Part shown: positions 2,395 to 63,070 of the stretch, in pieces
Layout of the letters: each line of letters opens with the position of its first letter
Numbering within the stretch: the first letter of the stretch is position 1
Assembly (NCBI GenBank): GCA_002269645.1
Contig: NIVC01002917.1
Coordinates: 1 to 64,000 of the forward strand
Direction: 5' to 3'
Source: Macrostomum lignano
Lineage: Eukaryota
DNA length: 64,000 bases
The notes under the pieces: generated by a model
The model's database searches: none
Seen by the model: the letters and a program-made list of their open reading frames with translations, nothing else
What the model was told of the DNA's origin: nothing
Translations under genes and position numbers: made by a program

Positions 2395-5300
2395 GACCTT
2401 CCGGCCCCTTGTGGGGAAACCTTCGGGCCTCAGGTCTCAGAAATAAATCAATTAGAGTCCTGGCCCCCCACTCCTGTCAGATGGTCAGCCCCGTGGTAGC
2501 TTGATCGTGTGGCGAGCAGTCTAGGTCCTATAGCTAAGAGAGGGACAGCGAGAGACAAGCAGGGAGAATTTTGAAGGTAGAAATTAGTTAATCCGCAGAT
2601 TAGGTAACTCGCTGCCACCAGCCCGTGCGTCCTGGCTCACCAAACCGGGACTCTCGAAATCGGGCTTCCGACTAGAGGGGGCTTTGCACTTACCTGCCAA
2701 CTAGTGTCTTTTTGCTGTCAATCTCGAAGTCATAGCCGATGCCGAGGTACAGAGGGGACTTGTGCAGGGGATTCTTGCAGTGGCGAGACTATGGGGTAGC
2801 TACATGTACTATTACATTGCTAAATACGAAAATATGTACTTTTGGCCGTCAACGCGCCAACTAGCCTCTCCTAGCGCTGATGATAGACTAACTCGAACTT
2901 CAGAGACCGCATGATTCATTACCCGAGCCGCTTGGCTAACCTAGAGTGCACAAAGTACATCTCTGGCGCCGATTCTGCACTTCTGGCAGTTTTGCTCACT
3001 GATTTGGTAGTTTGATCGACTGAGAACTGCCTTGCCATTGGTCCACTGTGACCGGTGCCTACTAGCTTAGCTATTCATCTGAGCCATCGGCGAACAAAGA
3101 AATAAAACCGATAAAAATAACTGTTAGATTTAACCTTCTCCTTAGATCACTTCACATCTCAGATTGAATTGGAGTTCAGACTACTAGCAGTATTATTGAA
3201 TGATTTCTGCCTCGATTACAGCACTACTGAACAAAATGAGCAAAAGTGTGCGTCTAATCCAGCTACTGAAACAGGGGACAGATAAGGAATCACCCAATCA
3301 AGCAAGTCTAGGCAGCCTCTCACCCAACCAATCAGAATTTCAACAGCCGGAGACTAGGTAATCCACAGTGACCGAATCGGCTTAGTGCTTCGCAGCTGTA
3401 GGCCCGGGATGATGCTAATTAGACCGAGTGTTCTCAAAGTGGGGGCTTGTTAAATGTGACGATTGTTCAGGGTTTTTTAGTCTGTTGTCTGCTGCGGCGT
3501 CGCAATCTTCGCTGATGGCTAGCAGGTGATGGATGATCTTTAACCTTGATGTTCGCTGCTGACGACCGGGGGAATTCGTCCTTGATGGTGATGGGGGGTG
3601 TCGCGATCCGGGGATCAAGAAACGTCGGTCAATTCCTGGCCGGTGGAGCCAAGGGTGGCACCCGGTCGCAAGAAGGTTTGCAGGGGTAGCACCCGGAATG
3701 CAGTCCGAGCGGGCCGAAAACACCGGTTTAAATAGCCACCAACTGGACCGCAGTTTGTTATAATGAGACACCTCGATTCTGATTGGCTGAGCCGATTTGT
3801 TAAAATGAGCGTCGAATTTTCTGATTGGCTAAGCTTGTTGCTACCCAGAATCACGTGACCGGGAGATCCTATCAGTTCCCTCGGGGTCGTAAAAACATGA
3901 CAGGTGCGGCCATAAATCAATCAAAATCGCAACAATATGATTTATGACTTTTCGCGTAGAATTGACAGAAATTAATTAAAAAAACATACATTAGAAAGCT
4001 CTTATTAAATAGAAAGTGAAGATAATGAAGAGAAATTGCTAATCGCTAATCCCAAAGTACTTTTAGGGGTAAAACGCATAGCTGTCAAAGCTGTCACACG
4101 CTTGAGTGAACACGAACAATAGGCTCTGACCTCATAAATCTTGATGGCCTGTCAAAATGATGAGAAAAAAGCTACCGCCCGCATCCTCTCAGACCATCTG
4201 GCGCCCGTCTCAACACTGAGTGAGGCGCAGGTGGCTGTCAGACCAGCTTCGAAAGCAATGATTTATGACCCAAAAAGCTGCGCCTATGTTATTATGACTA
4301 CTAGTATGACCAAACATTATATCTAGTATAGATTCTATGACAATTCGCAGAAAACGGATAAAAATGCCCATTGCCCACTGTTAGTAGGCAAGTAAGTTTA
4401 GAGCCCATGTGCTAGCGCGGGATTTGGAAAAAAGTGCGTCCTCATCACTAATGTATATTTTTTCATTAGTCTTTGTCAATTCTACGCGGAAAGTCATAAA
4501 TCATTTTGTTGCGATTTTGATTGATTTATGGCCGCACCCGTCATATTTTTACGACCCTGAGGGAACTGATGGGATCTCCCGGTCACGTGAATTTGGGTGG
4601 CAACAAGCTCAGCCAATCAGAAAATTCGACGTGCGTTATTACAAATCGGCTCAGCCAATCAGAATCGAGGTGTTCCATTATAACAAATTGCGGTCCAGTT
4701 GGCGGCTATTTAAACCGGCGTTTTTGGCCCGCTCGGAGCTCAACTGGCTGGAATTCGGCTCCACCTCCTAGGACTTTGGCCTAACGGAGCCCGACCGTCG
4801 TCTCTTGATCCCCGGATCGCGACACCCCCCATCACCATCAAGGACGAATTCCCCCGGTCGTCAACAGCGAACATCAAGGTTAAAGATCATCACCTGCTAG
4901 CTATCTGCGAAGTTTGTGACATCAGCATCATCCCGAGCCTACAGCTGCGAAGCACTAAGCCGATTCGGTCACTGTGGATTACCTGGTCTCCGGCTGTTGA
5001 AATTCTGATTGGTTGGGTGAGAGGCTGCCTAGACTTGCTTGATTGGGTGATTCCTTATCTGTCCCCTGTTTCAGTAGCTGGATTAGGCGCACACTTTTGC
5101 TCATTTTGTTCAGTAGTGCTGTAATCGAGGCAGAAATCATTCAATAATACTGCTAGTAGTCTGAACTCCAATTCAATCTGAGATGTGAAGTGATCTAAGG
5201 AGAAGGTTAAATCTAACAGTTATTTTTATCGGTTTTATTTCTTTGTTCGCCGATGGCTCAGATGAATAGCTAAGCTAGTAGGCACCGGTCACAGTGGACC

Positions 5301-5985
5301 AATGGCAAGGCAGTTCTCAGTCGATCAATCCATCAAATCAGTTAGCGAAATTGCCAATAGTGCAGAATCGGCGCCAGAGATGTACTCTGTGCACTCTAGG
5401 TTAGCCAAGCGGCTCGGGTAAAGTATCATGCGGTCTCCGATGTTCGAGTTAGCCTATCATCAGCGCTAGGAGAGGCTGGTTGGCGCATTGAAGGCCAAAA
5501 GTACAATTCCTCGTATTTAGCAATGTAATAGTACATGTAGCTACCCCATAGTCTCGCCACTACAAGAATCCCCTGCACAAGTCCCCTCTGTACCTGCATT
5601 GCCAATGCGATCAAGTCCCAGCAGTGTCCTTCTTATTATCGGCTATGACTTCGAGATTGACAGCAAAAAGACACTAGTTGGCAGGTAAGGCTAAGCCCCC
5701 TCTAGTCGGAAGCCCGATTTCGAGAGTCCCGGTTTGGTGAGCCAGGACGCACGGGCTGGTGGCAGCGAGTTAGCTTAGTCTGCGGATTAGTTGATCTCTA
5801 CCTTCGAAATTCTCCCTGCTTGTCTCTCGCTGTCCCTCTCTTAGCTATAGGACCTAGACTGCTCGCCACAAGATTAAGCTACCATGGGGCTGACCATCTG
5901 ACAGGAGTGGGGGGCCAGGACTCTAATTGATTTATTTCTGAGACCTGAGGCCCGAAGGCTTCCCCCCCCAGGGGGCCGAAAGATC
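2395..5985. repeat. Long inverted duplication: arms about 2395-3993 and 4448-5985, spacer about 450 bp
   Basis: The arms are direct reverse complements over about 1.55 kb (for example 3061-3240 equals the reverse complement of about 5100-5280 exactly). Indels at about 3417-3500 (left arm only) and about 5585-5635 (right arm only). Confidence 0.95.
4583..4714 (+). promoter_or_regulatory. Pol II promoter-like cassette (E-box, two CCAAT boxes, TATA-like), mirrored on - at about 3727-3858
   Basis: TCACGTGA 4583-4590; AGCCAATCAG 4611-4620 and 4653-4662; TATTTAAA 4707-4714. The same order and spacing is kept in the other arm. Confidence 0.55.
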
Positions 5986-8774: not shown

Positions 8775-16108
<7,334 letters not shown>

Positions 16109-17011
16109 GCGTTGAATCCGACCGAGATGCGGTCTTGAGAACTACGAGAGCTCACTGGGCTTTTTAACAGCGGCACTGATTCCTTATCTTACATAATCGC
16201 CACCGTATCTATTTAAATCTTTTTTCTTCCATGTTATTACTTTTCATTATGATTTTATCATATTATTTAATCTATCAGTGACTGTTGAAAATAGTCACTA
16301 TTGTGGTTTTCATTTGGGAAATGGGATATTAAAATAAACTATACGGTAAATCTACACGGGAATTGCTTTTGCAATAGCATTCTTGTAAAACCTTATGATT
16401 TTTAAGCTTTGTAAAACAAGGAATTCAAAGTGGCAGCACATTGCAAATGAGCAGAACGGTTCGTTCAATTTTTCCGGTCCAGCATTAAATCAATTCGCGA
16501 TAATGAGAGATCAGCTACTGAAAGTAGAAAAATAGAAACTTGAACATCGGAATTTATTCGATCAGTGAAAAAAGTATTACCACTATATTAGCTAGTTTCG
16601 TGTAGAAAAAGACAAGACTAAATAGAAAGTTTCTAGCGAGGACTTAGACTTGTGCTTCAGTCTGCCAAATTAGATTTTACTCCACTTTATATAACCCATA
16701 GGCTCAAAAAAGGAGGCCGCTATATCTGGCCGCCAGAGCGCGGCGCTGCACCGCCGGTGACTCTGAGCTGGCAGTTGCACCCTTGGTACATGGGTTCTGC
16801 TGCTGCTGACGCTGCAAACGGCGAGAACTTGCACACTCGGCGTTTCGTCGACTGCCTTCTGGCTGAGACCGGCGCCCGCGGACTCAGACGGCGGTGTGAC
16901 ATACTTTGGTGTCCCTTTTTGTTTTTGTTACGCTGTGAGCTCGATATTCGTTGCTAGTCATTAGGAGTTAATAAAATTCAGCATGAATGCTTGCACAACC
17001 ATGCATATAAA

Positions 17012-17298
17012 GGGGTTGTAGACTAGTCGTTAGAGCGTCGGACTCAGTATTGAAAGGTCGGGGGTTCGATTCCCGATCCCACTGGAACAATTTGTATCCT
17101 TGAGTAAGTCACTTAACTCTGAATTGTTTCAGTTCACCCAGCTGTAAAATGGGTTTTAGCTGGGGTAATTGAGAGTGTGTGTGGCAACCCCCCCCCCCAG
17201 TCCTTGGACTGAACAGCCGTACGCAGCCTTCAGATGCGCCGCGCAATAGCTGCGGCTGAGCTGTCGGTTGCACATCTGCCCATTAGGGCAGGTGCAAT
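17012..17298 (+). mobile_element. tRNA-derived SINE with CORE-like central domain, copy 1
   Basis: A-box-like TAGACTAGTCG and B-box GGTTCGATTCC. CCTTGAGTAAGTCACTTAAC..CAGCTGTAAAATGGG resembles the CORE consensus. Two more copies lie in the window. Confidence 0.85.
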
Positions 17299-17403
17299 CG
17301 AAAAAAATATGTACGGTCTGGTAAGGCAATTTAATGATGTCAGCACCGCCAAAATGGCTGATGCATCAGATGGTGTATTTTAGTTTTAGTCCAAATTAGA
17401 CAA

Positions 17404-17700
17404 TCAGGGAAAATCAGCCCTAATGATGTCGATGATGCGGTTCATCAGATCGTCGAGCATGTCGCTGAGCAGCTGCTTGTTGGCCTCCGCGATGCCCGTC
17501 AGGTTGTTGGCGATGAGCTGCATGATGGTGCGCACGTTCTCAACCAGATCGCGGCTGCCGATGCCAATCTGGATGAAGATCTCCACGATCTTGGCGATGG
17601 GTGCCGCCAGAACGTTGGCCAAGGTGTCAACAGCGCGACGGATCAGGTCGGCGGCCTCGCCAACCTTGTTCTCGATGTCGGCGCGGAGCTTGTCCAGCAC
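17404..17700 (-). CDS. Secreted protein exon 8 (terminal)
   Basis: VLDKLRAD..IAEANKQLL..ADFP stop. Confidence 0.85.
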   Translation of the reverse strand: MLDKLRADIENKVGEAADLIRRAVDTLANVLAAPIAKIVEIFIQIGIGSRDLVENVRTIMQLIANNLTGIAEANKQLLSDMLDDLMNRIIDIIRADFP

Positions 17701-20700
17701 CTGGGCAGTGGCAGTGGTTGCAGGGAAATTGTCACCATTCGATAGAAATTTTATTCCTAAATGAACATTTTATCAGGTTTGAAAAGACCTGGTGCGCGAA
17801 GGCTGACAGTAGGCTCTTAGGAATAAACTAGCAAACAGAGCTCCCCGTTGGGGCGCCAGCAAAGAATGGAATAATTTTTTTTTGAATAAACTGCATGTAG
17901 CTTCTGACCTTATCCTTGGCATTTCAGCAATTCCCCTCGTAAGCCTTGACATCTCAGCAATTCCCCTCGTAAGCCTTGGCATCTCAGCAATTCCCCTCGT
18001 AAGCCTTGAAATTTCAGCAATCCCAACCCCCAGTGAGCCTTGACGTCTCAGTTTATACAATAATAACTAAAAAAATACATTACGGAGATAGGAGGTGTTC
18101 ATTTTTTCATAACAAATAGTGTATTCTTCTTTTGATACGTCTTGCCCTTCTTATAGCTCTATTGATATTGACAAAGGTTTTCGTTTAAAAAATAGGATTT
18201 TATGTTAATTTTATATCCTACGTATATTTCCTATGCCCAAAATCGATTTGTTTTATGAATCTATTTTTTATCATTCTGTCACACAGTCATGAAGCTTTAA
18301 GAATGATAAAATAGATAGCTCAGGGGTCGGCAGCTCTTTTTTACTGGCCAATGATGGCCAATCTAGCGCATAACTGCGGACCAGGTGAAGGGAGAAGAGA
18401 GGGAAAGAGGAGGAGAGAGAGAGGAGAATAGAGGAGAGAAAAGAGAACAGGAGAGATGAGATATTGAGGTAAGAGAAAAGACACAAACATTGTGCTTTGG
18501 ATTGCTGTTGTGAAGTTTCAAAGGACCAGAGGGCCGGATAGAGAGGCTTCGCGGGCCGTATAGTTTGCCGACTCCTGCTCTAGCTGGTCAACCTTGCCTC
18601 TTATGCAGCAATGTACACTGTAATGTACAGTGAAATTCGTACAGACAAAAGGCTCCCTACGCGGCTGGAAAAGCTTTTCATAGTCTATGGCCAGCTACAC
18701 TGTCAACCACGCGGACAATGAATGGATTCGTATTTTCAGGCTTCGGAGTGACTAGTGATAATACTAATCATAGTAATCACCTCATTAATGAAGGAAATGA
18801 TGGGGCCGAGAATGCGGTTGATAATCTCCAGGAGGATGGAGAAATCCATAGCCTGACGGGCCGCGACCGCGTCGCCGTCGATGATGTCGAGTAGGCCAGA
18901 GATCACCAGGCTAAGAATGCTCTTAAAGATGGCTTTGTTGGCCTCGTGGATTCCGGAGACGCTGTCTGTAAATTAATTGACGTTTTACATGTACTTAAAA
19001 TTTTTTCAATGACCAGAGTTAATAATTGAGTTTTGAGACTCCTACCGATCAGGGTCTCAAGCGCCCTCTTGATAGCCTTGGCGAGGTCGCCAATCTCGAT
19101 GCCGATGTCGTGAAGAACGCCGATAATCTTGACGACCGGATCGCGGAGCAGCAGCGTCAGCTCGTCGATGAGGCGCTGCAATTTGGCCTTGGCTTCGTCG
19201 GTTTTGTCCTCGATCAGCATGCGGATCTGGTCCAAGATCTGGATGGGGTAATCGAAAGCTTTTGAAATAGATTTGATGCTGGACAATGTGTGTCTCTTCT
19301 GTGTGTGAGGATTTCTCCCTCAGGTTGTGTCACAGTTAATTAATGGTAGCTTGTGTCACAGGCTGTCTCCCTCAGGTTGTGTCTCAGTCAATGAATGGTA
19401 GCTTGTGTCACAGGCTGTCTCCCTCAGGTTGTGTCACAGGCTGTCTCCCTCAGGTTGTGTCACAAGCTGTCTCCCTCAGGTTGTGTCACAGGCTGTCTCC
19501 CTCAGGTTGTGTCAGTTAATTGAGTGGTTGCTTGTGTCACAGGCTGTCTCCCTCAGGTTGTGTCACAGGCTGTCTCCCTCAGGTTGTGTCACAGGCTGTC
19601 TCCCTCAGGTTGTGTCAGTTAATTGAGTGGTTGCTTGTGTCACAGGCTGTCTCCCTCAGGTTGTGTCACAGGCTGTCTCCCTCAGGTTGTGTCACAGGCT
19701 GTCTCCCTCAGGTTGTGTCAGTTAATTGAGTGGTTGCTTGTGTCACAGGCTGTCTCCCTCAGGTTGTGTCACAGGCTGTCTCCCTCAGGTTGTGTCACAG
19801 GCTGTCTCCCTCAGGTTGTGTCACAGGCTATCTCCCTCAGCTTGTGTCACAGGCTGTCTCCCTCAGGTTGTGTCACAGTCAATGAATGGTAGCTTGTGTC
19901 ACAGGCTGTCTCCCTCAGGTTGTGTCACAGTTAGTTAATGGTAGTTTGTGTCACAGGCTGTCTCCCTCAGGTTGTGTCACAGTTAGTTAATGGTAGCTTG
20001 TGTCACAGGCTGTCTCCCTCAGGTTGTGTCACAGTTTTCTGTGCCAGCTGATTTGTCAGGCTGGGTCACCGCCCCCTCCCTCAGTGCCAAGCACTCACCC
20101 CGTTGATCTTGCCCAGAATCGGCTGCACAATCCAGCCAATGATGCGGTCAATGATGAGGAAGGCCTCGTCGCGCTTGGGTGCCAGAAGGAAGCCTTTGCC
20201 AACGATGCCCGACACCAGGATGTCCGTCACCTTTTCGATGAGGAGGGCCACAGTCTCCGCACTGATGGAGGCAATTGAGCCGATACCGCCTGAAATAATA
20301 AAGTACATGGTGTCATTGAATCGGAAACTGTTACCAACTACAGTGCACCCCTCAGTCTGATAAATGATCTTACCAAGAACAGCAGCCACCAACTGTTTAA
20401 TGGCGTCCCTCACGTTGACAACCTCGCCGAGGATATTGTTCATGATGTCTATGATGCGGATAGCGAACGGCCGGATGAGCTCGGCGATGGCGTCGGCGTA
20501 GTCCAGAATGTTGTCTCCGATGATGCCGACCTGATCAATCAGGGACAGGATGAGGGACTGCACCTGGCGCTTGGCAAGCTCCAGGAGCGGCTGGATGAGC
20601 TTGTCAAGAATGCCGCGAGCCTGCTTGGGCTGGGCCAGCAGCTGCTGGAACACCTCCAGCTCGGCGGCGGTTGGCAGCAGCTTGTCCACGATGTAGTTGA

Positions 20701-23472
20701 TGAGAGACTTGATGATCTCCTTGTTGGCGTCGCCGATAACGCCAACGTATTCTGTTGTGCAGGTGGCATTTTTGGAGTAAGATTTTGAGCATATAGAGTA
20801 AGACATTCATTTTGGAGCTTCACAGTAGCATGAGGCATATTTACTCAAATTTTTATTCTAAGATCATTTTTATGCATTCAACATAACGCATAATTGGTAG
20901 TTAGGCTATTTTTAGAAGGTAAACCAGTATTACTAAAAGTAAAATAAATTATAAAAGTTATCATTTATTGGTAACTTAAAATTCGAGATTAAAACAAAAC
21001 AATTTTCGAGATTAGCAACTTTGTTTCTTGGAAAGCATAGTAATAAAAAGATGAAGATGATGAAGATGACTCCTGGAGGTGGGCAATCGTGCCTATTCCA
21101 CTGGCCATTGAACACGCACACTGATACGGATACGTACGCATGCACACACTCATACAGGTTGTACACTACAGCAACCATGACTTTTGTCACCGTCATTCCT
21201 GCACACTCTCTGTGCCTTGGAATTTGGCCCTCCTAGACACTTTTCACGGTGCCTGAACCCAAAATTGATGTCGCCACTCGCGCGGCTTCAAACCAAGGAC
21301 TTTGGCGCGAGAGTCGGACGCGTTAAACACTGATTTGCTCAGCCCCACCCCCCCCCCCAGAAAACGGCTCCTCACCGAACAGAGCCTCAACGGCCATGCG
21401 GCTGCCCCCCCCCCAGCAAACGGCTCCTCACCGAACAGAGCCTCAACGGCCATGCGGCAGCCCCCCCCCCCCAGCAAACGGCTCCTCACCGAACAGAGCC
21501 TCAACGGCCATGCGGCAGCCCCCCCCCAGCAAACGGCTCCTCACCGAACAGAGCCTCAACGGCCATGCGGCAGCCCCCCCCCCCCCAGCAAACGGCTCCT
21601 CACCGAACAGAGCCTCAACGGCCATGCGGAAGCCCCCCCCCCCAGCAAACGGCTCCTCACCGAACAGAGCCTCAACGGCCATGCGGATTCGCTCGCGAAG
21701 CTCCACGCCGGCGCCGATGATGTTGTTGATCTGGTCCAGAATCCTAATGACGAAGGGCCTGATCAGTTCGACAAGGGCGTCAATCATCTCCTTGACATTG
21801 CCGATGATGAGACCGCCCTGGTCCTTGATCGAGTTGATGATCGAGTTGATTTGCTGGAATAGTAAGAGAATGCAAATGGCATAGTAGTTGATTTTGGTAG
21901 TTATAAGGGATACAGATAGCAGATGCAGACACAGGTAATTAAAAGTAAATCTGTTCAGCAATGTCTCACAGTCAGCACCAACTGTTTCAGCGGCCTCAGC
22001 AGGATGTCGATGATGCCACTGATGAAGAAGCCAACTTCCTTCCGGTCAGCTTCTGTAGCACAGGATAGTAGTATAAAGCAGTATTACGAGTAATGTCAGA
22101 CTATATCAGGCAGGGGTAAAGGGCGCCCACCAACAGACAGGGGTAAGGGGAAATTATCAAGAGACAGGGGTAAGGGGAAATTATCAAGAGACAGGGGTAA
22201 GGGGCAATTATCAAGAGACAGGGGTAAGGGGCAATTATCAAGAGACAGGGGTAAGGGGCAATTATCAAGAGACAGGGGTAAGGGGCAATTATCAAGAGAC
22301 AGGGGTAAGGGGCAATTATCAAGAGACAGGGGTAAGGGGCAATTATCAAAAGACAGGGGTAAGGGGCGCCCATCAAGAGACAGGGGTAAGGTGCAATTAT
22401 CAAAAGACAGGGGTAAGGGGCAATTATCAAAAGACAGGGGTAAGGGGCAATTATCAAAAGACAGGGGTAAGGGGCAATTATCAAAAGACAGGGGTAAGGG
22501 GCAATTATCAAAAGACAGGGGTAAGGGGCAATTATCAAGAGACAGGGGTAAGGGGCGCCCATCAAGAGACAGGGGTAAGGGGCAATTATCAAGAGACAGG
22601 GGTAAGGGGCAATTATCAAGAGACAGGGGTAAGGGGCAATTATCAAAAGACAGGGGTAAGGTGCAATTATCAAGAGACAGGGGTAAGGTGCAATTATCAA
22701 GAGACAGGGGTAAGGGGCAATTATCAAGAGACAGGGGTAAGGGGCAATTATCAAGAGACAGGGGTAAGGGGCAATTATCAAAAGACAGGGGTAAGGTGCA
22801 ATTATCAAGAGACAGGGGTAAGGTGCAATTATCAAAAGACAGGGGTAAGGTGCAATTATCAAGAGACAGGGGTAAGGTGCAATTATCAAGACACAGGGGT
22901 AAGGGGCAATTATCAAGAGACAGGGGTAAGGGGCAATTATCAAGAGACAGGGGTAAGGGGCAATTATCAAGAGACAGGGGTAAGGTGCAATTATCAACAG
23001 ACAGTGGTAAGGGGCGCCCATCAAGAGACAGGGGTAAGGGGCGCCCATCAAGAGACAGGGGTAAGGGGCGCCCATCAAGAGACAGGGATAAGGGGCGCCC
23101 ATCAAGAGACAGGGATAAGGGGCGCCCATCAAGAGACAGGGCTAAGGGGCGCCCGTCAAGAGACAGGGCTAAGGGGCGCCCATCAAGAGAGAGGGCTAAG
23201 GGGCGCCCATCAAGAGACAGGGCTAAGGGGCGTATATTGACGCCCCTTAGGGTTGCGGCCCCTTTAAATTAATTTCCTGAGCGCGCCACTAAGAGTGCAA
23301 CTTGCTATGACATAAGGACAAACTACCAGTGTCCAGCGCACAGATGAAGCAGCTACTCACTTCCAGCTTCCTCAACCTGCGACTTCCGTCGGATTTCGGC
23401 GGCTGACGCAGTCAGGGCGGCCAGCCCGACGACTCCAAGCAGCAGCACTACCAGCCAGGACGACAATCTCAT
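17404..23472 (-). CDS. Uncharacterised secreted amphipathic alpha-helical repeat protein, 543 aa, 8 exons
   Basis: Exons 23472-23361, 22052-21970, 21853-21661, 20751-20374, 20289-20099, 19238-19046, 18965-18781, 17700-17404. All are GT-AG with consistent phases and total 1632 nt. Signal peptide MRLSSWLVVLLLGVVGLAALTASA; about four internal repeats of about 125 aa; no Cys. Confidence 0.85.
17914..18024. repeat. 30-bp tandem repeat, about 4 copies
   Basis: Unit CCTTGGCATTTCAGCAATTCCCCTCGTAAG. Confidence 0.9.
18321..18577. mobile_element. hAT-type MITE (CAGGGGTCGGCA termini)
   Basis: Ends CAGGGGTCGGCA and TGCCGACTCCTG (11/12 complementary). Flanks AGATAGCT and CTCTAGCT are only a partial TSD. 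A related copy lies at 42988. Confidence 0.6.
18781..18965 (-). CDS. Secreted protein exon 7
   Basis: DSVSGIHEANKAIFKS..GPIISFINE; phase 1-0. Confidence 0.82.
19046..19238 (-). CDS. Secreted protein exon 6
   Basis: ILDQIRML..RALETLI; 193 nt; phase 0-1. Confidence 0.85.
19310..20035. repeat. 26-bp minisatellite with periodic spacer variants (intron 5 of the secreted gene)
   Basis: Unit TTGTGTCACAGGCTGTCTCCCTCAGG. Confidence 0.97.
20099..20289 (-). CDS. Secreted protein exon 5
   Basis: GGIGSIAS..QPILGKING; phase 1-0. Confidence 0.85.
20374..20751 (-). CDS. Secreted protein exon 4
   Basis: EYVGVIGDANKEII..LVAAVL; phase 1-1. Confidence 0.85.
21343..21690 (-). repeat. 55-59-bp tandem repeat spanning an exon/intron junction, 6 copies
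   Basis: Minus-strand unit ATGGCCGTTGAGGCTCTGTTCG|GTGAGGAGCCGTTTGCT(G)9-13CTGCCGC. Confidence 0.95.
21661..21853 (-). CDS. Secreted protein exon 3
   Basis: QINSII..RIRMAVEALF; 193 nt; phase 0-1. Confidence 0.85.
21970..22052 (-). CDS. Secreted protein exon 2
   Basis: KADRKEVGFFISGIIDILLRPLKQLVLT; phase 1-0. Confidence 0.8.
22105..23232. repeat. 27-bp minisatellite, about 41 copies (intron 1 of the secreted gene)
   Basis: Unit AAGAGACAGGGGTAAGGGGCAATTATC; the GGGCGCCC variant is polarised to one end. Confidence 0.97.
23361..23472 (-). CDS. Secreted protein exon 1 (signal peptide)
   Basis: ATG at 23472; hydrophobic leader; GTGAGT donor. Confidence 0.8.

Positions 23473-26406: not shown

Positions 26407-63070
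<36,664 letters not shown>

What the first reader, a model, noticed from the sequence alone, without database searches (positions are those of the whole stretch)
17404..23472. Orphan secreted protein built from about four amphipathic-helix repeats of about 125 aa
Seen: signal peptide, 543 aa, no Cys, very Ile/Leu-rich with alternating D/E/K/R. Recurrent motifs: (I/L)(I/L)D.(I/L)..P (exons 2, 4, 5), ELIRP (exons 3, 4) and (D/E)ANK.(I/L) (exons 4, 7, 8). Exons 3 and 6 are both 193 nt, phase 0-1, ending AVEALF-G and ALETLI-G, indicating exon-module duplication. I recognise no family. Inference: an apolipoprotein-like lipid carrier, a granule or yolk protein, or an alpha-pore-forming or defence protein.
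Basis: partly seen in the sequence, partly recalled or inferred. Interest (0 to 1): 0.7.

Follow-up and report, generated by a model that had tools for sequence, protein, structure and literature searches.

The report
Flatworm orphan secreted helical-repeat protein
This is a real, conserved gene of the flatworm Macrostomum lignano for a secreted, all-helical, very isoleucine/leucine-rich protein built from four 126-residue copies of one module; it has no detectable relatives outside close kin and its function is still unknown.

Summary
On the minus strand, 23472-17404, eight GT-AG exons give a 543-aa, cysteine-free protein with an N-terminal signal peptide. It is identical to public Macrostomum lignano models Mlig018020.g1/g2. 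Two intronless mRNA contigs from relatives (77% and 63% identity) are collinear across every junction, and dN/dS is 0.17-0.33.

After exon 1, the protein is exactly four 126-aa units. Each unit is a 64-aa X module (193-nt exon, phase 0 to 1) flanked by the tail and head of a 62-aa Y module. Exon 4 (378 nt) is 185 + 193 nt, a Y exon fused to an X exon. Shuffle z-scores reach 20.

An exhaustive HMMER search of 1.84 billion proteins found only the gene itself. Pfam, PDB and Foldseek gave nothing.

UniProt's name "Phage-related protein" comes from tape-measure profile hits. The reversed sequence reproduces those hits, so they reflect helix texture, not homology.

Function is inferred only. My best guess (about 0.3) is a folded amphipathic-helix bundle that hides Ile/Leu faces and binds lipid or other hydrophobic cargo. 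Strongly conserved polar surfaces on modules X1 and X3 point to a specific partner. A self-assembling gland secretion is about equally likely. No expression data were found.

The parts
23361..23472 (-). Exon 1 (112 nt, ends in phase 1). It starts at the ATG at 23472 and encodes the signal peptide (aa 1 to about 25, 23472-23398, MRLSSWLVVLLLGVVGLAALTASA|AE) plus a short variable acidic/basic linker.
   Evidence: first in-frame ATG, GTGAGT donor; this is the only TM-like uncharged hydrophobic segment (KD19 = 2.44); the AAEI after the predicted cleavage site is invariant in the orthologues. The cleavage site itself was judged by eye (AXA rule), not by a predictor.
21970..22052 (-). Exon 2 (83 nt, phase 1 to 0): the 'Y-tail' of unit 1 (KADRKEVGFFISGIIDILLRPLKQLVLT).
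   Evidence: Written side by side, its 28 residues align gap-free with the 28-aa tail of Y1, with G13, D16 and P21 in the same positions. Shuffle z = 4.5.
21661..21853 (-). Exon 3 (193 nt, phase 0 to 1): module X1, aa 66-129. This is the most constrained part of the protein.
   Evidence: dN/dS is 0.06-0.11. 90% of polar residues are invariant in three species.
20374..20751 (-). Exon 4 (378 nt, phase 1 to 1): Y1 (185 nt) fused to X2 (193 nt). It equals one whole repeat period with the internal intron missing.
   Evidence: exon 3 versus the second half of exon 4 is 47.6% identical over 63 aa, E = 3e-18; exon 4 N-terminus versus exon 7 N-terminus is 41.7% over 24 aa; z = 20.3.
20099..20289 (-). 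Exon 5 (191 nt, phase 1 to 0): module Y2, the most divergent Y. It begins with the only long uncharged stretch outside the signal peptide (aa 249-266, spanning the exon 4/5 junction).
   Evidence: (Y1-Y2 z = 3.7, Y2-Y3 z = 4.4).
19046..19238 (-). Exon 6 (193 nt, phase 0 to 1): module X3, the second strongly constrained module.
   Evidence: exon 3 versus exon 6 in register, E = 2e-4; exon 6 versus exon 8, 31.7% over 63 aa, E = 4e-11; dN/dS 0.03-0.10; 78% of polar residues invariant.
18781..18965 (-). Exon 7 (185 nt, phase 1 to 0): module Y3.
   Evidence: Y1-Y3 z = 5.7; Y3-Y4head z = 8.4.
17404..17700 (-). Exon 8 (297 nt = 193 + 104): X4 plus the 34-aa Y 'head', followed by the TGA stop at 17406-17404.
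   Evidence: The C-terminus agrees with both orthologue mRNAs. The public g3 copy lacks one base here, which explains the aberrant 511-aa model PAA91444.1.
17330..17335 (-). ATTAAA, a candidate poly(A) signal 68 nt after the stop codon.
   Evidence: This is a sequence match only; usage was not shown. The orthologue contigs carry 47 and 100 nt after the stop codon, and they may be incomplete at the 3' end.
21348..21686 (-). 58-bp minisatellite (5.9 copies) straddling the exon 3/intron 3 boundary. It repeats the last 26 nt of exon 3 plus the GTGAGG donor, giving six identical candidate 5' splice sites.
   Evidence: Six copies are present in all three gene copies. The orthologue mRNAs match use of the first donor at 21661.
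22131..23231 (-). 27-bp minisatellite (about 41 copies) that fills most of intron 1.
   Evidence: Intron 1 is 471, 1308 and 4570 bp in the three genomic copies, while the exons are identical.
19314..20034 (-). 26/52/103-bp minisatellite in intron 5.
   Evidence: Intron 5 is 705, 808 and 860 bp in the three copies.

Best explanation
What is shown: Mlig018020 is a functional, Macrostomum-restricted gene for a secreted protein.

What is predicted: after signal-peptide removal, the roughly 518-aa mature chain is entirely alpha-helical and consists of four tandem 126-aa units with about 4-5 helices each.

What is inferred (mechanism): the helices are strongly amphipathic, with a period of 3.6-3.7 residues and about half of each helix apolar and Ile/Leu-lined. 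The chain can therefore stay soluble only by packing these faces into a straight helical bundle or solenoid, or onto lipid. I propose it works as an extracellular binder or carrier of hydrophobic cargo (dietary or structural lipid). It would either enclose the cargo in an Ile/Leu-lined core or open its bundle onto a lipid surface. The invariant polar surfaces of modules X1 and X3 would serve as the docking or oligomerisation sites. This resembles apolipophorin-III, nematode NPA/FAR proteins and cestode HLBP proteins in manner, not in ancestry.

Inferred origin: a one-unit gene (signal exon, 83-nt tail exon, 193-nt X exon, 104-nt head exon) grew by in-frame head-to-tail tandem duplication, which created the 185-nt 'junction' Y exons. 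Two introns were lost later.
For: Real gene:
- The 8-exon chain is identical to public models.
- Orthologue mRNAs are collinear across every junction.
- dN/dS is 0.17-0.33 with dS of about 0.9-1.1.

Secreted:
- The N-terminus is a classical n-h-c signal and is the only TM-like segment.
- By inspection there is no KDEL and no hydrophobic C-terminus.

All-helical and amphipathic:
- AF2 secondary structure gives 19 helices in the full-length model and 5 per unit.
- The hydrophobic-moment spectrum peaks at 97-100 degrees.
- Autocorrelation peaks fall at lags 4, 7/8, 11, 15, 18, 22 and 29, with none at 14, 21 or 28.

Unusually apolar for a non-membrane protein: GRAVY is +0.48, ILVFMWA is 51%, and helices average 54% apolar.

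Lipid-surface-type charge layout: K/R sit at 112 degrees and D/E at 138 degrees from the apolar centre, and 81% of D/E lie beyond 120 degrees (permutation P = 0.0004).

Specific surfaces: 90% (X1) and 78% (X3) of polar residues are invariant across three species.

Repeat and exon arithmetic.

Precedent: helminth lineages carry their own secreted, helix-rich, lineage-restricted lipid binders, namely cestode HLBP (PMC4358968) and nematode FAR (PMC4613501, PMC9022830).
Against: - No ligand, tissue or phenotype evidence exists. Six supplement look-ups and the full-text searches found no mention of the gene.
- The tertiary models are poor: pLDDT 43 for the full length and 61 for one unit. No cavity or bundle topology is therefore shown.
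- There is no sequence or fold match to any lipid-binding family.
- The K/R-versus-D/E asymmetry was not calibrated against ordinary soluble helical bundles.
- High conservation of polar residues fits a self-assembling structural protein just as well.
- Lineage-restricted secreted proteins of flatworms are often gland products such as adhesives, seminal fluid or mucus (my prior knowledge; see PMC5977470 and PMC6410801 for such screens).
Confidence: 0.3

Rival explanations
1. Self-assembling structural or matrix component of a gland secretion or secretory granule (mucus/rhabdite-type rods, adhesive or cement, eggshell, or seminal plug material). The four hyperstable helical units polymerise through the conserved X1 and X3 surfaces.
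For: - The gene is taxon-restricted, secreted and built of repeats.
- Polar surfaces of X1 and X3 are nearly invariant, as expected for lattice or fibre contacts.
- The nearest PDB 'texture' matches are designed hyperstable helical bundles and repeat proteins.
- Many Macrostomum-specific secreted genes are gland products (PMC5977470, PMC6410801).
Against: - There are no Cys, almost no Tyr (0.6%) and no Gly/Lys-rich stretches, which cross-linked adhesives and eggshell proteins usually have.
- The mature protein is acidic (net charge -13), whereas rhabdites stain as basic protein (my prior knowledge).
- There is no heptad coiled-coil signal for a fibre.
- No expression data exist.
Confidence: 0.3
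2. Membrane-active defence or prey-killing protein (alpha-helical pore former). It is secreted as a soluble bundle that unfolds and inserts amphipathic helices into target membranes.
For: - The helices are strongly amphipathic with wide apolar faces.
- There is a secretion signal.
- A Gly-rich uncharged helix-turn-helix lies at the exact centre of the protein (aa 249-266).
Against: - That uncharged stretch is only 18 aa, too short for a buried hydrophobic hairpin of colicin, Bcl-2 or ClyA type.
- The net charge is -13 and D/E dominate the polar face, the opposite of lytic cationic helices.
- There is no Pfam, PDB or Foldseek match to any pore-former.
- dN/dS is low in X1 and X3, unlike arms-race effectors.
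Confidence: 0.08
3. Nutrient-storage (yolk-like) protein: a secreted or granule-stored reserve rich in essential aliphatic amino acids.
For: Ile, Leu and Val together make 38% of the residues. The protein has a signal peptide. It has no enzymatic or binding motif.
Against: Storage proteins tolerate substitutions, yet here X1 and X3 have dN/dS of 0.03-0.11 and 78-90% invariant polar residues. There is no evidence of oocyte expression.
Confidence: 0.07
4. Descendant of a phage tail tape-measure protein acquired by horizontal transfer. This is the reading implied by UniProt's automatic name 'Phage-related protein' for A0A1I8HRI9.
For: PHROG tape-measure families hit at E = 2e-15 to 1e-3, and the two orthologues hit the same families.
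Against: - The reversed mature sequence, which cannot be homologous, hits the same families at E = 1e-12 to 1e-5 (47 versus 56 bits on phrog_1272). Global and local shuffles hit nothing.
- The curated models fail: TIGR01760 scores 12.7 bits against a cutoff of 28.8, and Tape_meas_lam_C scores 13.1 against 23.
- tblastn against 50,697 phage genomes finds no match at E <= 1e-3.
- The family profile finds no phage or bacterial protein among 1.84e9.
- The gene has seven spliceosomal introns.
Confidence: 0.02

Closest known systems
Exchangeable apolipoproteins (vertebrate apoA-I/A-IV/E; insect apolipophorin-III)
   Same: - Secreted and all-helical.
- Cys-free or Cys-poor.
- Built by tandem duplication of amphipathic-helix modules, with helices kinked by Pro.
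- Positive charges at the polar/apolar interface and negative charges at the polar centre.
- About five helices per bundle unit, as in apoLp-III (the comparison with apoLp-III is from my own knowledge).
   Different: - No sequence relationship.
- The repeat unit is 126 aa, not 11/22 aa.
- Ile-rich rather than Leu/Glu/Lys-rich.
- Polar faces are highly conserved.
Helminth-specific helix-rich lipid binders: nematode polyprotein allergens (NPA/ABA-1), nematode FAR proteins, cestode HLBP/Antigen B
   Same: These are lineage-restricted, secreted, alpha-helix-rich proteins without homologues elsewhere. NPAs are also tandem arrays of roughly 130-aa helical units. They serve worms with restricted lipid metabolism, such as cestodes (PMC4358968, PMC4613501, PMC9022830).
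   Different: - No Pfam hit to any of these families at E <= 10.
- No conserved dibasic cleavage sites at unit boundaries. Only one KR, at the U1/U2 boundary, and it is lost in P0003. The protein is therefore not a polyprotein.
- Ligand binding is untested.
- The host is free-living.
Phage tail tape-measure proteins (PHROG 1272, 4200, 305 and others)
   Same: Long runs of amphipathic helix with a 3.6-3.7-residue apolar periodicity and Ile/Ala/Gly-rich composition. This is enough for profile hits down to E = 2e-15.
   Different: The hits are direction-independent (reversed-sequence control). They are absent at the sequence level and below the curated cutoffs. This is resemblance of texture only.
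De novo designed helical bundles and repeat proteins; Ile-rich right-handed coiled coil of tetrabrachion (the latter from my own knowledge)
   Same: Idealised short-loop helices with Ile/Leu cores and E/K/R/D surfaces. Designed proteins are the top, though non-significant, PDB sequence and Foldseek matches. The periodicity is non-heptad.
   Different: There is no significant match (best Foldseek E = 0.028 with TM about 0.2, on a low-confidence model). Natural origin, a secretion signal and a 126-aa unit also set this protein apart.

Membership tests
Exchangeable apolipoproteins (Pfam Apolipoprotein PF01442 / ApoLp-III PF07464) | Match to the family profile at or above the gathering score | tested here: not met
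   neither family appears among the Pfam hits, even at E <= 10.
Exchangeable apolipoproteins (Pfam Apolipoprotein PF01442 / ApoLp-III PF07464) | Tandem 11/22-residue amphipathic repeats with high charge density (about one third charged residues, negative GRAVY) | tested here: not met
   The repeat unit is 126 aa. Charged residues are 25% and GRAVY is +0.48. The amphipathic period of 3.6-3.7 residues is compatible with the family but not specific to it.
Exchangeable apolipoproteins (Pfam Apolipoprotein PF01442 / ApoLp-III PF07464) | Class-A charge distribution (K/R at the interface, D/E at the polar centre) | tested here: met
   112 versus 138 degrees, permutation P = 0.0004. This was not calibrated on non-lipid-binding bundles.
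Exchangeable apolipoproteins (Pfam Apolipoprotein PF01442 / ApoLp-III PF07464) | Reversible lipid binding | not testable with these tools
   Needs DMPC clearance or lipoprotein flotation assays.
Phage tail tape-measure proteins | Profile similarity that is specific to the true (forward) sequence | tested here: not met
   the reversed sequence scores 47.3 bits on phrog_1272, against 56.4 bits for the forward sequence, and hits the same set of families.
Phage tail tape-measure proteins | Curated model above its cutoff (TIGR01760, PF09718), or sequence-level similarity to phage genomes | tested here: not met
   12.7 bits against 28.8; 13.1 against 23; no tblastn match; no hit in 1.84e9 proteins.
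Alpha-helical pore-forming toxins (colicin/Bcl-2-like, ClyA/Hbl/Nhe, Cry domain I) | A buried hydrophobic helical hairpin or tongue of about 35-40 uncharged residues | tested here: not met
   the longest uncharged run outside the signal peptide is 18 aa (249-266).
Alpha-helical pore-forming toxins (colicin/Bcl-2-like, ClyA/Hbl/Nhe, Cry domain I) | Sequence or fold match to a member | tested here: not met
   Searches gave no significant match. The fold test is weak because the models have pLDDT of 43 and 61.
Nematode polyprotein allergens / FAR / cestode HLBP | Match to the family profile | tested here: not met
   none of these families is listed at E <= 10.
Nematode polyprotein allergens / FAR / cestode HLBP | For NPAs: conserved dibasic processing sites between units | tested here: not met
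   only the U1/U2 boundary has KR, and it is not conserved in P0003 (ARIQ).
Left-handed coiled-coil fibre proteins | Heptad (7/14/21/28) hydrophobic periodicity over long uninterrupted helices | tested here: not met
   autocorrelation is about 0 at lags 14, 21 and 28; most helices are 12-33 residues (one up to 44), separated by G/P loops.

The most novel reading that the evidence does not exclude
Mlig018020 founds a previously unrecognised, genus-level class of secreted lipid-carrying or lipoprotein-scaffold protein. It would be an apolipoprotein analogue that arose independently in macrostomid flatworms and grew from one 126-aa unit to four by junction-exon duplication. It would distribute dietary lipid in an animal that has no circulatory system.
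Probability: 0.15. Interest if true: 0.6.

Novelty: new variant of a known kind. Interest (0 to 1): 0.3.

Why it matters
If the lipid-carrier reading is right, it adds a third independent helminth solution to extracellular lipid transport, beside nematode NPA/FAR and cestode HLBP. It would do so in a transgenic, RNAi-amenable free-living model. It would also give a very clean example of a protein built by in-frame duplication of a two-exon module.

Three practical points hold whatever the function turns out to be:
- The UniProt name 'Phage-related protein' is an artefact of helix periodicity and should not be propagated.
- The GenBank model PAA91444.1 (g3) is frameshifted by a single missing base.
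- The reversed-sequence control is a cheap guard against tape-measure-type false positives for any helical repeat protein.

Otherwise this is one of many lineage-restricted secreted genes of flatworms.

Tried and rejected
- **Pfam-A, whole protein.** Nothing reached a gathering score. The best hits were TetR_C_5 at 19 bits (cutoff 21) and Baculo_PEP_C at 16.7 bits (cutoff 38).
- **PDB by sequence and by two profiles.** Nothing below E = 0.1. The top hits were designed bundles.
- **AlphaFold2.** The full-length orthologue with a 3-sequence alignment gave pLDDT 43. One repeat unit, with a 12-row alignment made from the internal repeats of three species, gave pLDDT 61. Foldseek against PDB and BFVD gave no hit at E <= 0.001 and TM <= 0.46.
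- **Submitting the spliced window protein.** I used P0002/P0003/P0001 instead.
- **PHROG tape-measure hits.** Rejected as homology by the reversed and shuffled controls, NCBIfam, tblastn against phages and the exhaustive search.
- **Repeat-unit profile against the 5.8e9 database.** It returned nothing at all, not even the family's own members. I treat this as a candidate-selection quirk, not as evidence.
- **Expression evidence.** A full-text search for 'Mlig018020' found 0 papers. Supplement searches of six Macrostomum papers found no occurrence or no held files.
- **Species of the two orthologue runs.** I call them 'close relatives' on the basis of 63-77% identity.
- **Whole-sequence periodogram peak at 3.62 residues.** Rejected as a special long-range register, because it is the 35th harmonic of the roughly 126.7-aa repeat.
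- **Rfam and tRNA scans of the window.** Nothing found.
- **Neighbouring genes.** They give no functional hint.


Full report
**What is there.** The window is a eukaryotic, minisatellite-rich sequence. It is identical to Macrostomum lignano contig NIVC01002917.1, bases 1-64000, of assembly GCA_002269645.1.

On the minus strand I rebuilt the exon chain from open frames and splice signals alone. The exons are 23472-23361, 22052-21970, 21853-21661, 20751-20374, 20289-20099, 19238-19046, 18965-18781 and 17700-17404. All seven introns are GT-AG. The CDS is 1632 nt and encodes 543 aa.

The product is identical to public models PAA48904.1/PAA54394.1 (BOX15_Mlig018020g1/g2, UniProt A0A1I8HRI9). A third genomic copy (g3, PAA91444.1, 511 aa) has an aberrant C-terminus because that assembly lacks one base in exon 8. 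The three copies have identical exons apart from single-base differences in exon 8. They differ in intron 1 (471, 1308 and 4570 bp) and intron 5 because of minisatellites.

**Is it a real gene?** Yes. Only two other proteins among 5.8 billion resemble it: P0002 at 77% identity and P0003 at 63%. Both are encoded without interruption on 1.7-1.8-kb contigs assembled from sequencing runs. One of them still carries an Illumina adapter at its 5' end, so they are mRNA-derived. They are collinear with the window protein across all seven exon junctions and at the C-terminus.

Nei-Gojobori dN/dS is 0.17, 0.33 and 0.27 for the three pairs, with dS of about 0.9-1.1. The refutation test 'RNA-seq contradicts the exon chain' is therefore not met. 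The species of the two runs could not be named.

**Checking the observation.**
- The protein has no Cys. Ile is 16.8%, Leu 13.8%, Ala 9.6% and Val 7.6%. D+E is 71 and K+R is 59.
- The N-terminus (MRLSSWLVVLLLGVVGLAALTASA|AE) is the only uncharged hydrophobic segment of transmembrane length. It has the n-h-c/AXA form of a cleaved signal peptide. This was judged by inspection; no predictor was available.
- ELIRP occurs in exons 3 and 4. (D/E)ANK.(I/L) occurs in exons 4, 7 and 8. The strict (I/L)(I/L)D.(I/L)..P occurs in exons 2 and 4, and in exon 5 only with a four-residue insertion. Every motif count is far above shuffle expectation.
- Exons 3 and 6 are both 193 nt, phase 0 to 1.

**Repeat anatomy.** Exon-wise BLASTP gave the following matches:

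| Pair | Identity | E-value |
|---|---|---|
| Exon 3 vs second half of exon 4 | 47.6% over 63 aa | 3e-18 |
| Exon 6 vs first 63 aa of exon 8 | 31.7% over 63 aa | 4e-11 |
| Exon 3 vs exon 6, in register | 27.3% over 55 aa | 2e-4 |
| Start of exon 7 vs end of exon 8 | 34.4% over 32 aa | 3e-5 |
| Start of exon 4 vs start of exon 7 | 41.7% over 24 aa | 1e-3 |

Smith-Waterman scores against 2000 shuffles gave these z-scores:

| Pair | z |
|---|---|
| X1-X2 | 20.3 |
| X3-X4 | 13.8 |
| X1-X3 | 5.0 |
| Y1-Y3 | 5.7 |
| Y3-Y4head | 8.4 |
| X vs Y controls | about -0.7 to 1.0 |

The period is therefore one 64-aa X module (193-nt exon, phase 0 to 1) plus one roughly 62-aa Y module (185-191-nt exon, phase 1 to 0). 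That is 378 nt or 126 aa.

- Exon 4 is exactly 185 + 193 = 378 nt, a Y exon fused to an X exon.
- Exon 8 is 193 + 104 nt, an X exon fused to a Y 'head'.
- Exon 2 (83 nt) aligns residue-for-residue with the 28-aa 'tail' of Y, and 102 + 83 = 185.

Read from exon 2, the protein is exon 1 followed by exactly four units of [tail 28 - X 64 - head 34].

From this I infer the origin. A one-unit ancestor (signal exon, 83-nt exon, 193-nt exon, 104-nt last exon) was enlarged by in-frame head-to-tail duplications, which created the 185-nt junction exons. U1/U2 and U3/U4 are the most recent pairs, and two introns were lost later.

**Orphan status.** A profile of the family, scored by HMMER against every one of 1.84 billion cluster representatives, returned only the family's own representative.
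- Pfam has nothing at gathering score.
- PDB by sequence and by two profiles has nothing below E = 0.1.
- AlphaFold2 gave an all-helical but low-confidence model of the full-length orthologue (pLDDT 43, 19 helices).
- One unit, using the 12 internal repeats of three species as the alignment, gave a moderate model (pLDDT 61, pTM 0.55, five helices).
- Foldseek against PDB and BFVD found no match at E <= 0.001. The top, non-significant hits were de novo designed helical bundles and repeat proteins.

**The 'phage-related' lead.** UniProt's automatic name prompted a PHROG scan. About ten tail tape-measure families hit at E = 2e-15 to 1e-3, and the orthologues hit them too.

As a control I submitted the reversed mature sequence, three global shuffles and two local shuffles. 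The reversed sequence hit the same families at E = 1e-12 to 1e-5. The shuffles hit none of them.

The curated tape-measure models are far below their cutoffs. tblastn against 50,697 phage genomes found nothing. The exhaustive search found no phage protein. The similarity is therefore one of amphipathic-helix periodicity, not descent, and the database name is misleading.

**Physical character.**
- The hydrophobic-moment spectrum peaks at 97-100 degrees.
- Apolar autocorrelation peaks at lags 4, 7/8, 11, 15, 18, 22 and 29 and is about zero at 14, 21 and 28. These are straight amphipathic helices, not a heptad coiled coil.
- A sharp whole-sequence peak at 3.62 residues is only the 35th harmonic of the 126.7-aa repeat.
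- Mature GRAVY is +0.48, 51% of residues are ILVFMWA, and predicted helices average 54% apolar. Only 25% of residues are charged and the net charge is -13. This is exceptionally apolar for a protein with no membrane-spanning segment.
- On helical wheels, K/R lie at a mean of 112 degrees and D/E at 138 degrees from the apolar centre (permutation P = 0.0004). This is the class-A layout of lipid-surface helices.
- Constraint is uneven. X1 and X3 have dN/dS of 0.03-0.11 and 90% and 78% invariant polar residues. Their duplicates X2 and X4 are much freer. The protein therefore has specific, conserved polar surfaces and is not merely a 'texture' protein.

**How it most likely works (inference).** Such a chain can be soluble only if the Ile/Leu faces are buried in a bundle or solenoid, or on lipid. 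My best single reading, at about 0.3, is an extracellular binder or carrier of hydrophobic cargo. It would use an Ile/Leu-lined core or an opening bundle, with X1 and X3 as docking or oligomerisation surfaces. This is analogous to apolipophorin-III and to the lineage-restricted helix-rich lipid binders of other worms (PMC4358968, PMC4613501, PMC9022830).

- About equally likely (0.3) is a self-assembling component of a gland secretion or granule.
- A membrane-active defence protein is less likely (0.08): the longest uncharged stretch is 18 aa and the polar faces are acidic.
- A storage protein is unlikely (0.07), given the constraint on polar residues.
- Tape-measure ancestry is essentially excluded (0.02).

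No tissue, ligand or phenotype evidence could be found.

**Surroundings.**
- No other gene is called within 10 kb of the g3 copy.
- In the window, the upstream neighbour on the same strand is a 1769-aa multi-PDZ gene model, with PDZ exons at 26407-26829, 30635-30925 and 33273-33737; a further PDZ exon on the same strand at 60131-60874 lies outside the stretch examined and may belong to the same gene.
- The left end carries reverse-transcriptase and hAT fragments and a large inverted repeat.
- None of this bears on function.

**Verdict.** The functional guesses remain open, with the apolipoprotein-like one only partly supported. This is a new, genus-restricted family of a familiar general kind (a secreted amphipathic-helix repeat protein). 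Interest is 0.3.

Noticed in passing
window 21348-21686 (minus strand, exon 3/intron 3 boundary): A 58-bp minisatellite repeats the last 26 nt of exon 3 plus its GTGAGG donor six times. This gives five decoy 5' splice sites inside intron 3. Use of the donors at 21604 or 21490 would keep the frame, adding 19 or 57 aa; the others give premature stops. All three genomic copies have six repeats.
   Followed up: partly
window 22131-23231 and 19314-20034; loci L004, L005, L006: Intronic minisatellites (27-bp and 26/103-bp units) make intron 1 measure 471, 1308 and 4570 bp, and intron 5 measure 705, 808 and 860 bp, in the three M. lignano copies. The exons are identical apart from single-base differences in exon 8.
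   Followed up: yes
L004:14838-14860 (public g3 copy), equivalent to window about 17625: The Mlig_3_7 copy on NIVC01000087.1 lacks one base in exon 8 (ACACC to ACA-C). This frameshifts GenBank model PAA91444.1 (511 aa). I could not tell whether it is an assembly error or a real allele.
   Followed up: partly
UniProt A0A1I8HRI9 (identical to the window protein): The automatic name 'Phage-related protein' traces to tape-measure profile hits. The reversed sequence reproduces these hits, so the name is spurious.
   Followed up: yes
window 9473-15528: A 6-kb pure (TAGT)n microsatellite with about 1514 copies and 96% matches. It gives a GC skew of about +0.86-0.89 over 10-14 kb.
   Followed up: no
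window 2413-3983 and 4458-5965: A large inverted repeat (arms up to 675 nt at 96% complementarity, three collinear blocks). It lies next to a reverse-transcriptase fragment (24-551, minus) and a hAT dimerisation-domain ORF (801-1304, plus). It is probably a transposon remnant or a palindrome.
   Followed up: no
window 26407-33737 and 60131-60874 (minus strand): PDZ-domain exons (for example GLGFSIVGG motifs; Pfam PDZ at E = 1e-14 for 60131-60874). Those at 26407-33737 fall within a 1769-aa multi-PDZ gene model just upstream of the orphan on the same strand; the exon at 60131-60874 lies beyond the stretch examined and may belong to the same gene. Many non-triplet minisatellites lie in the region between them.
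   Followed up: partly
window 17010-17090: A tRNA-like stretch (...GGTTCGATTCCC...) just downstream of the gene looks like a SINE head. ARAGORN and Rfam call nothing there.
   Followed up: partly
tool behaviour: The word-indexed protein search, run with the 12-row repeat-unit profile, returned no hit at all, not even the family's own members. Negative results from that mode with short repeat profiles should not be trusted.
   Followed up: no
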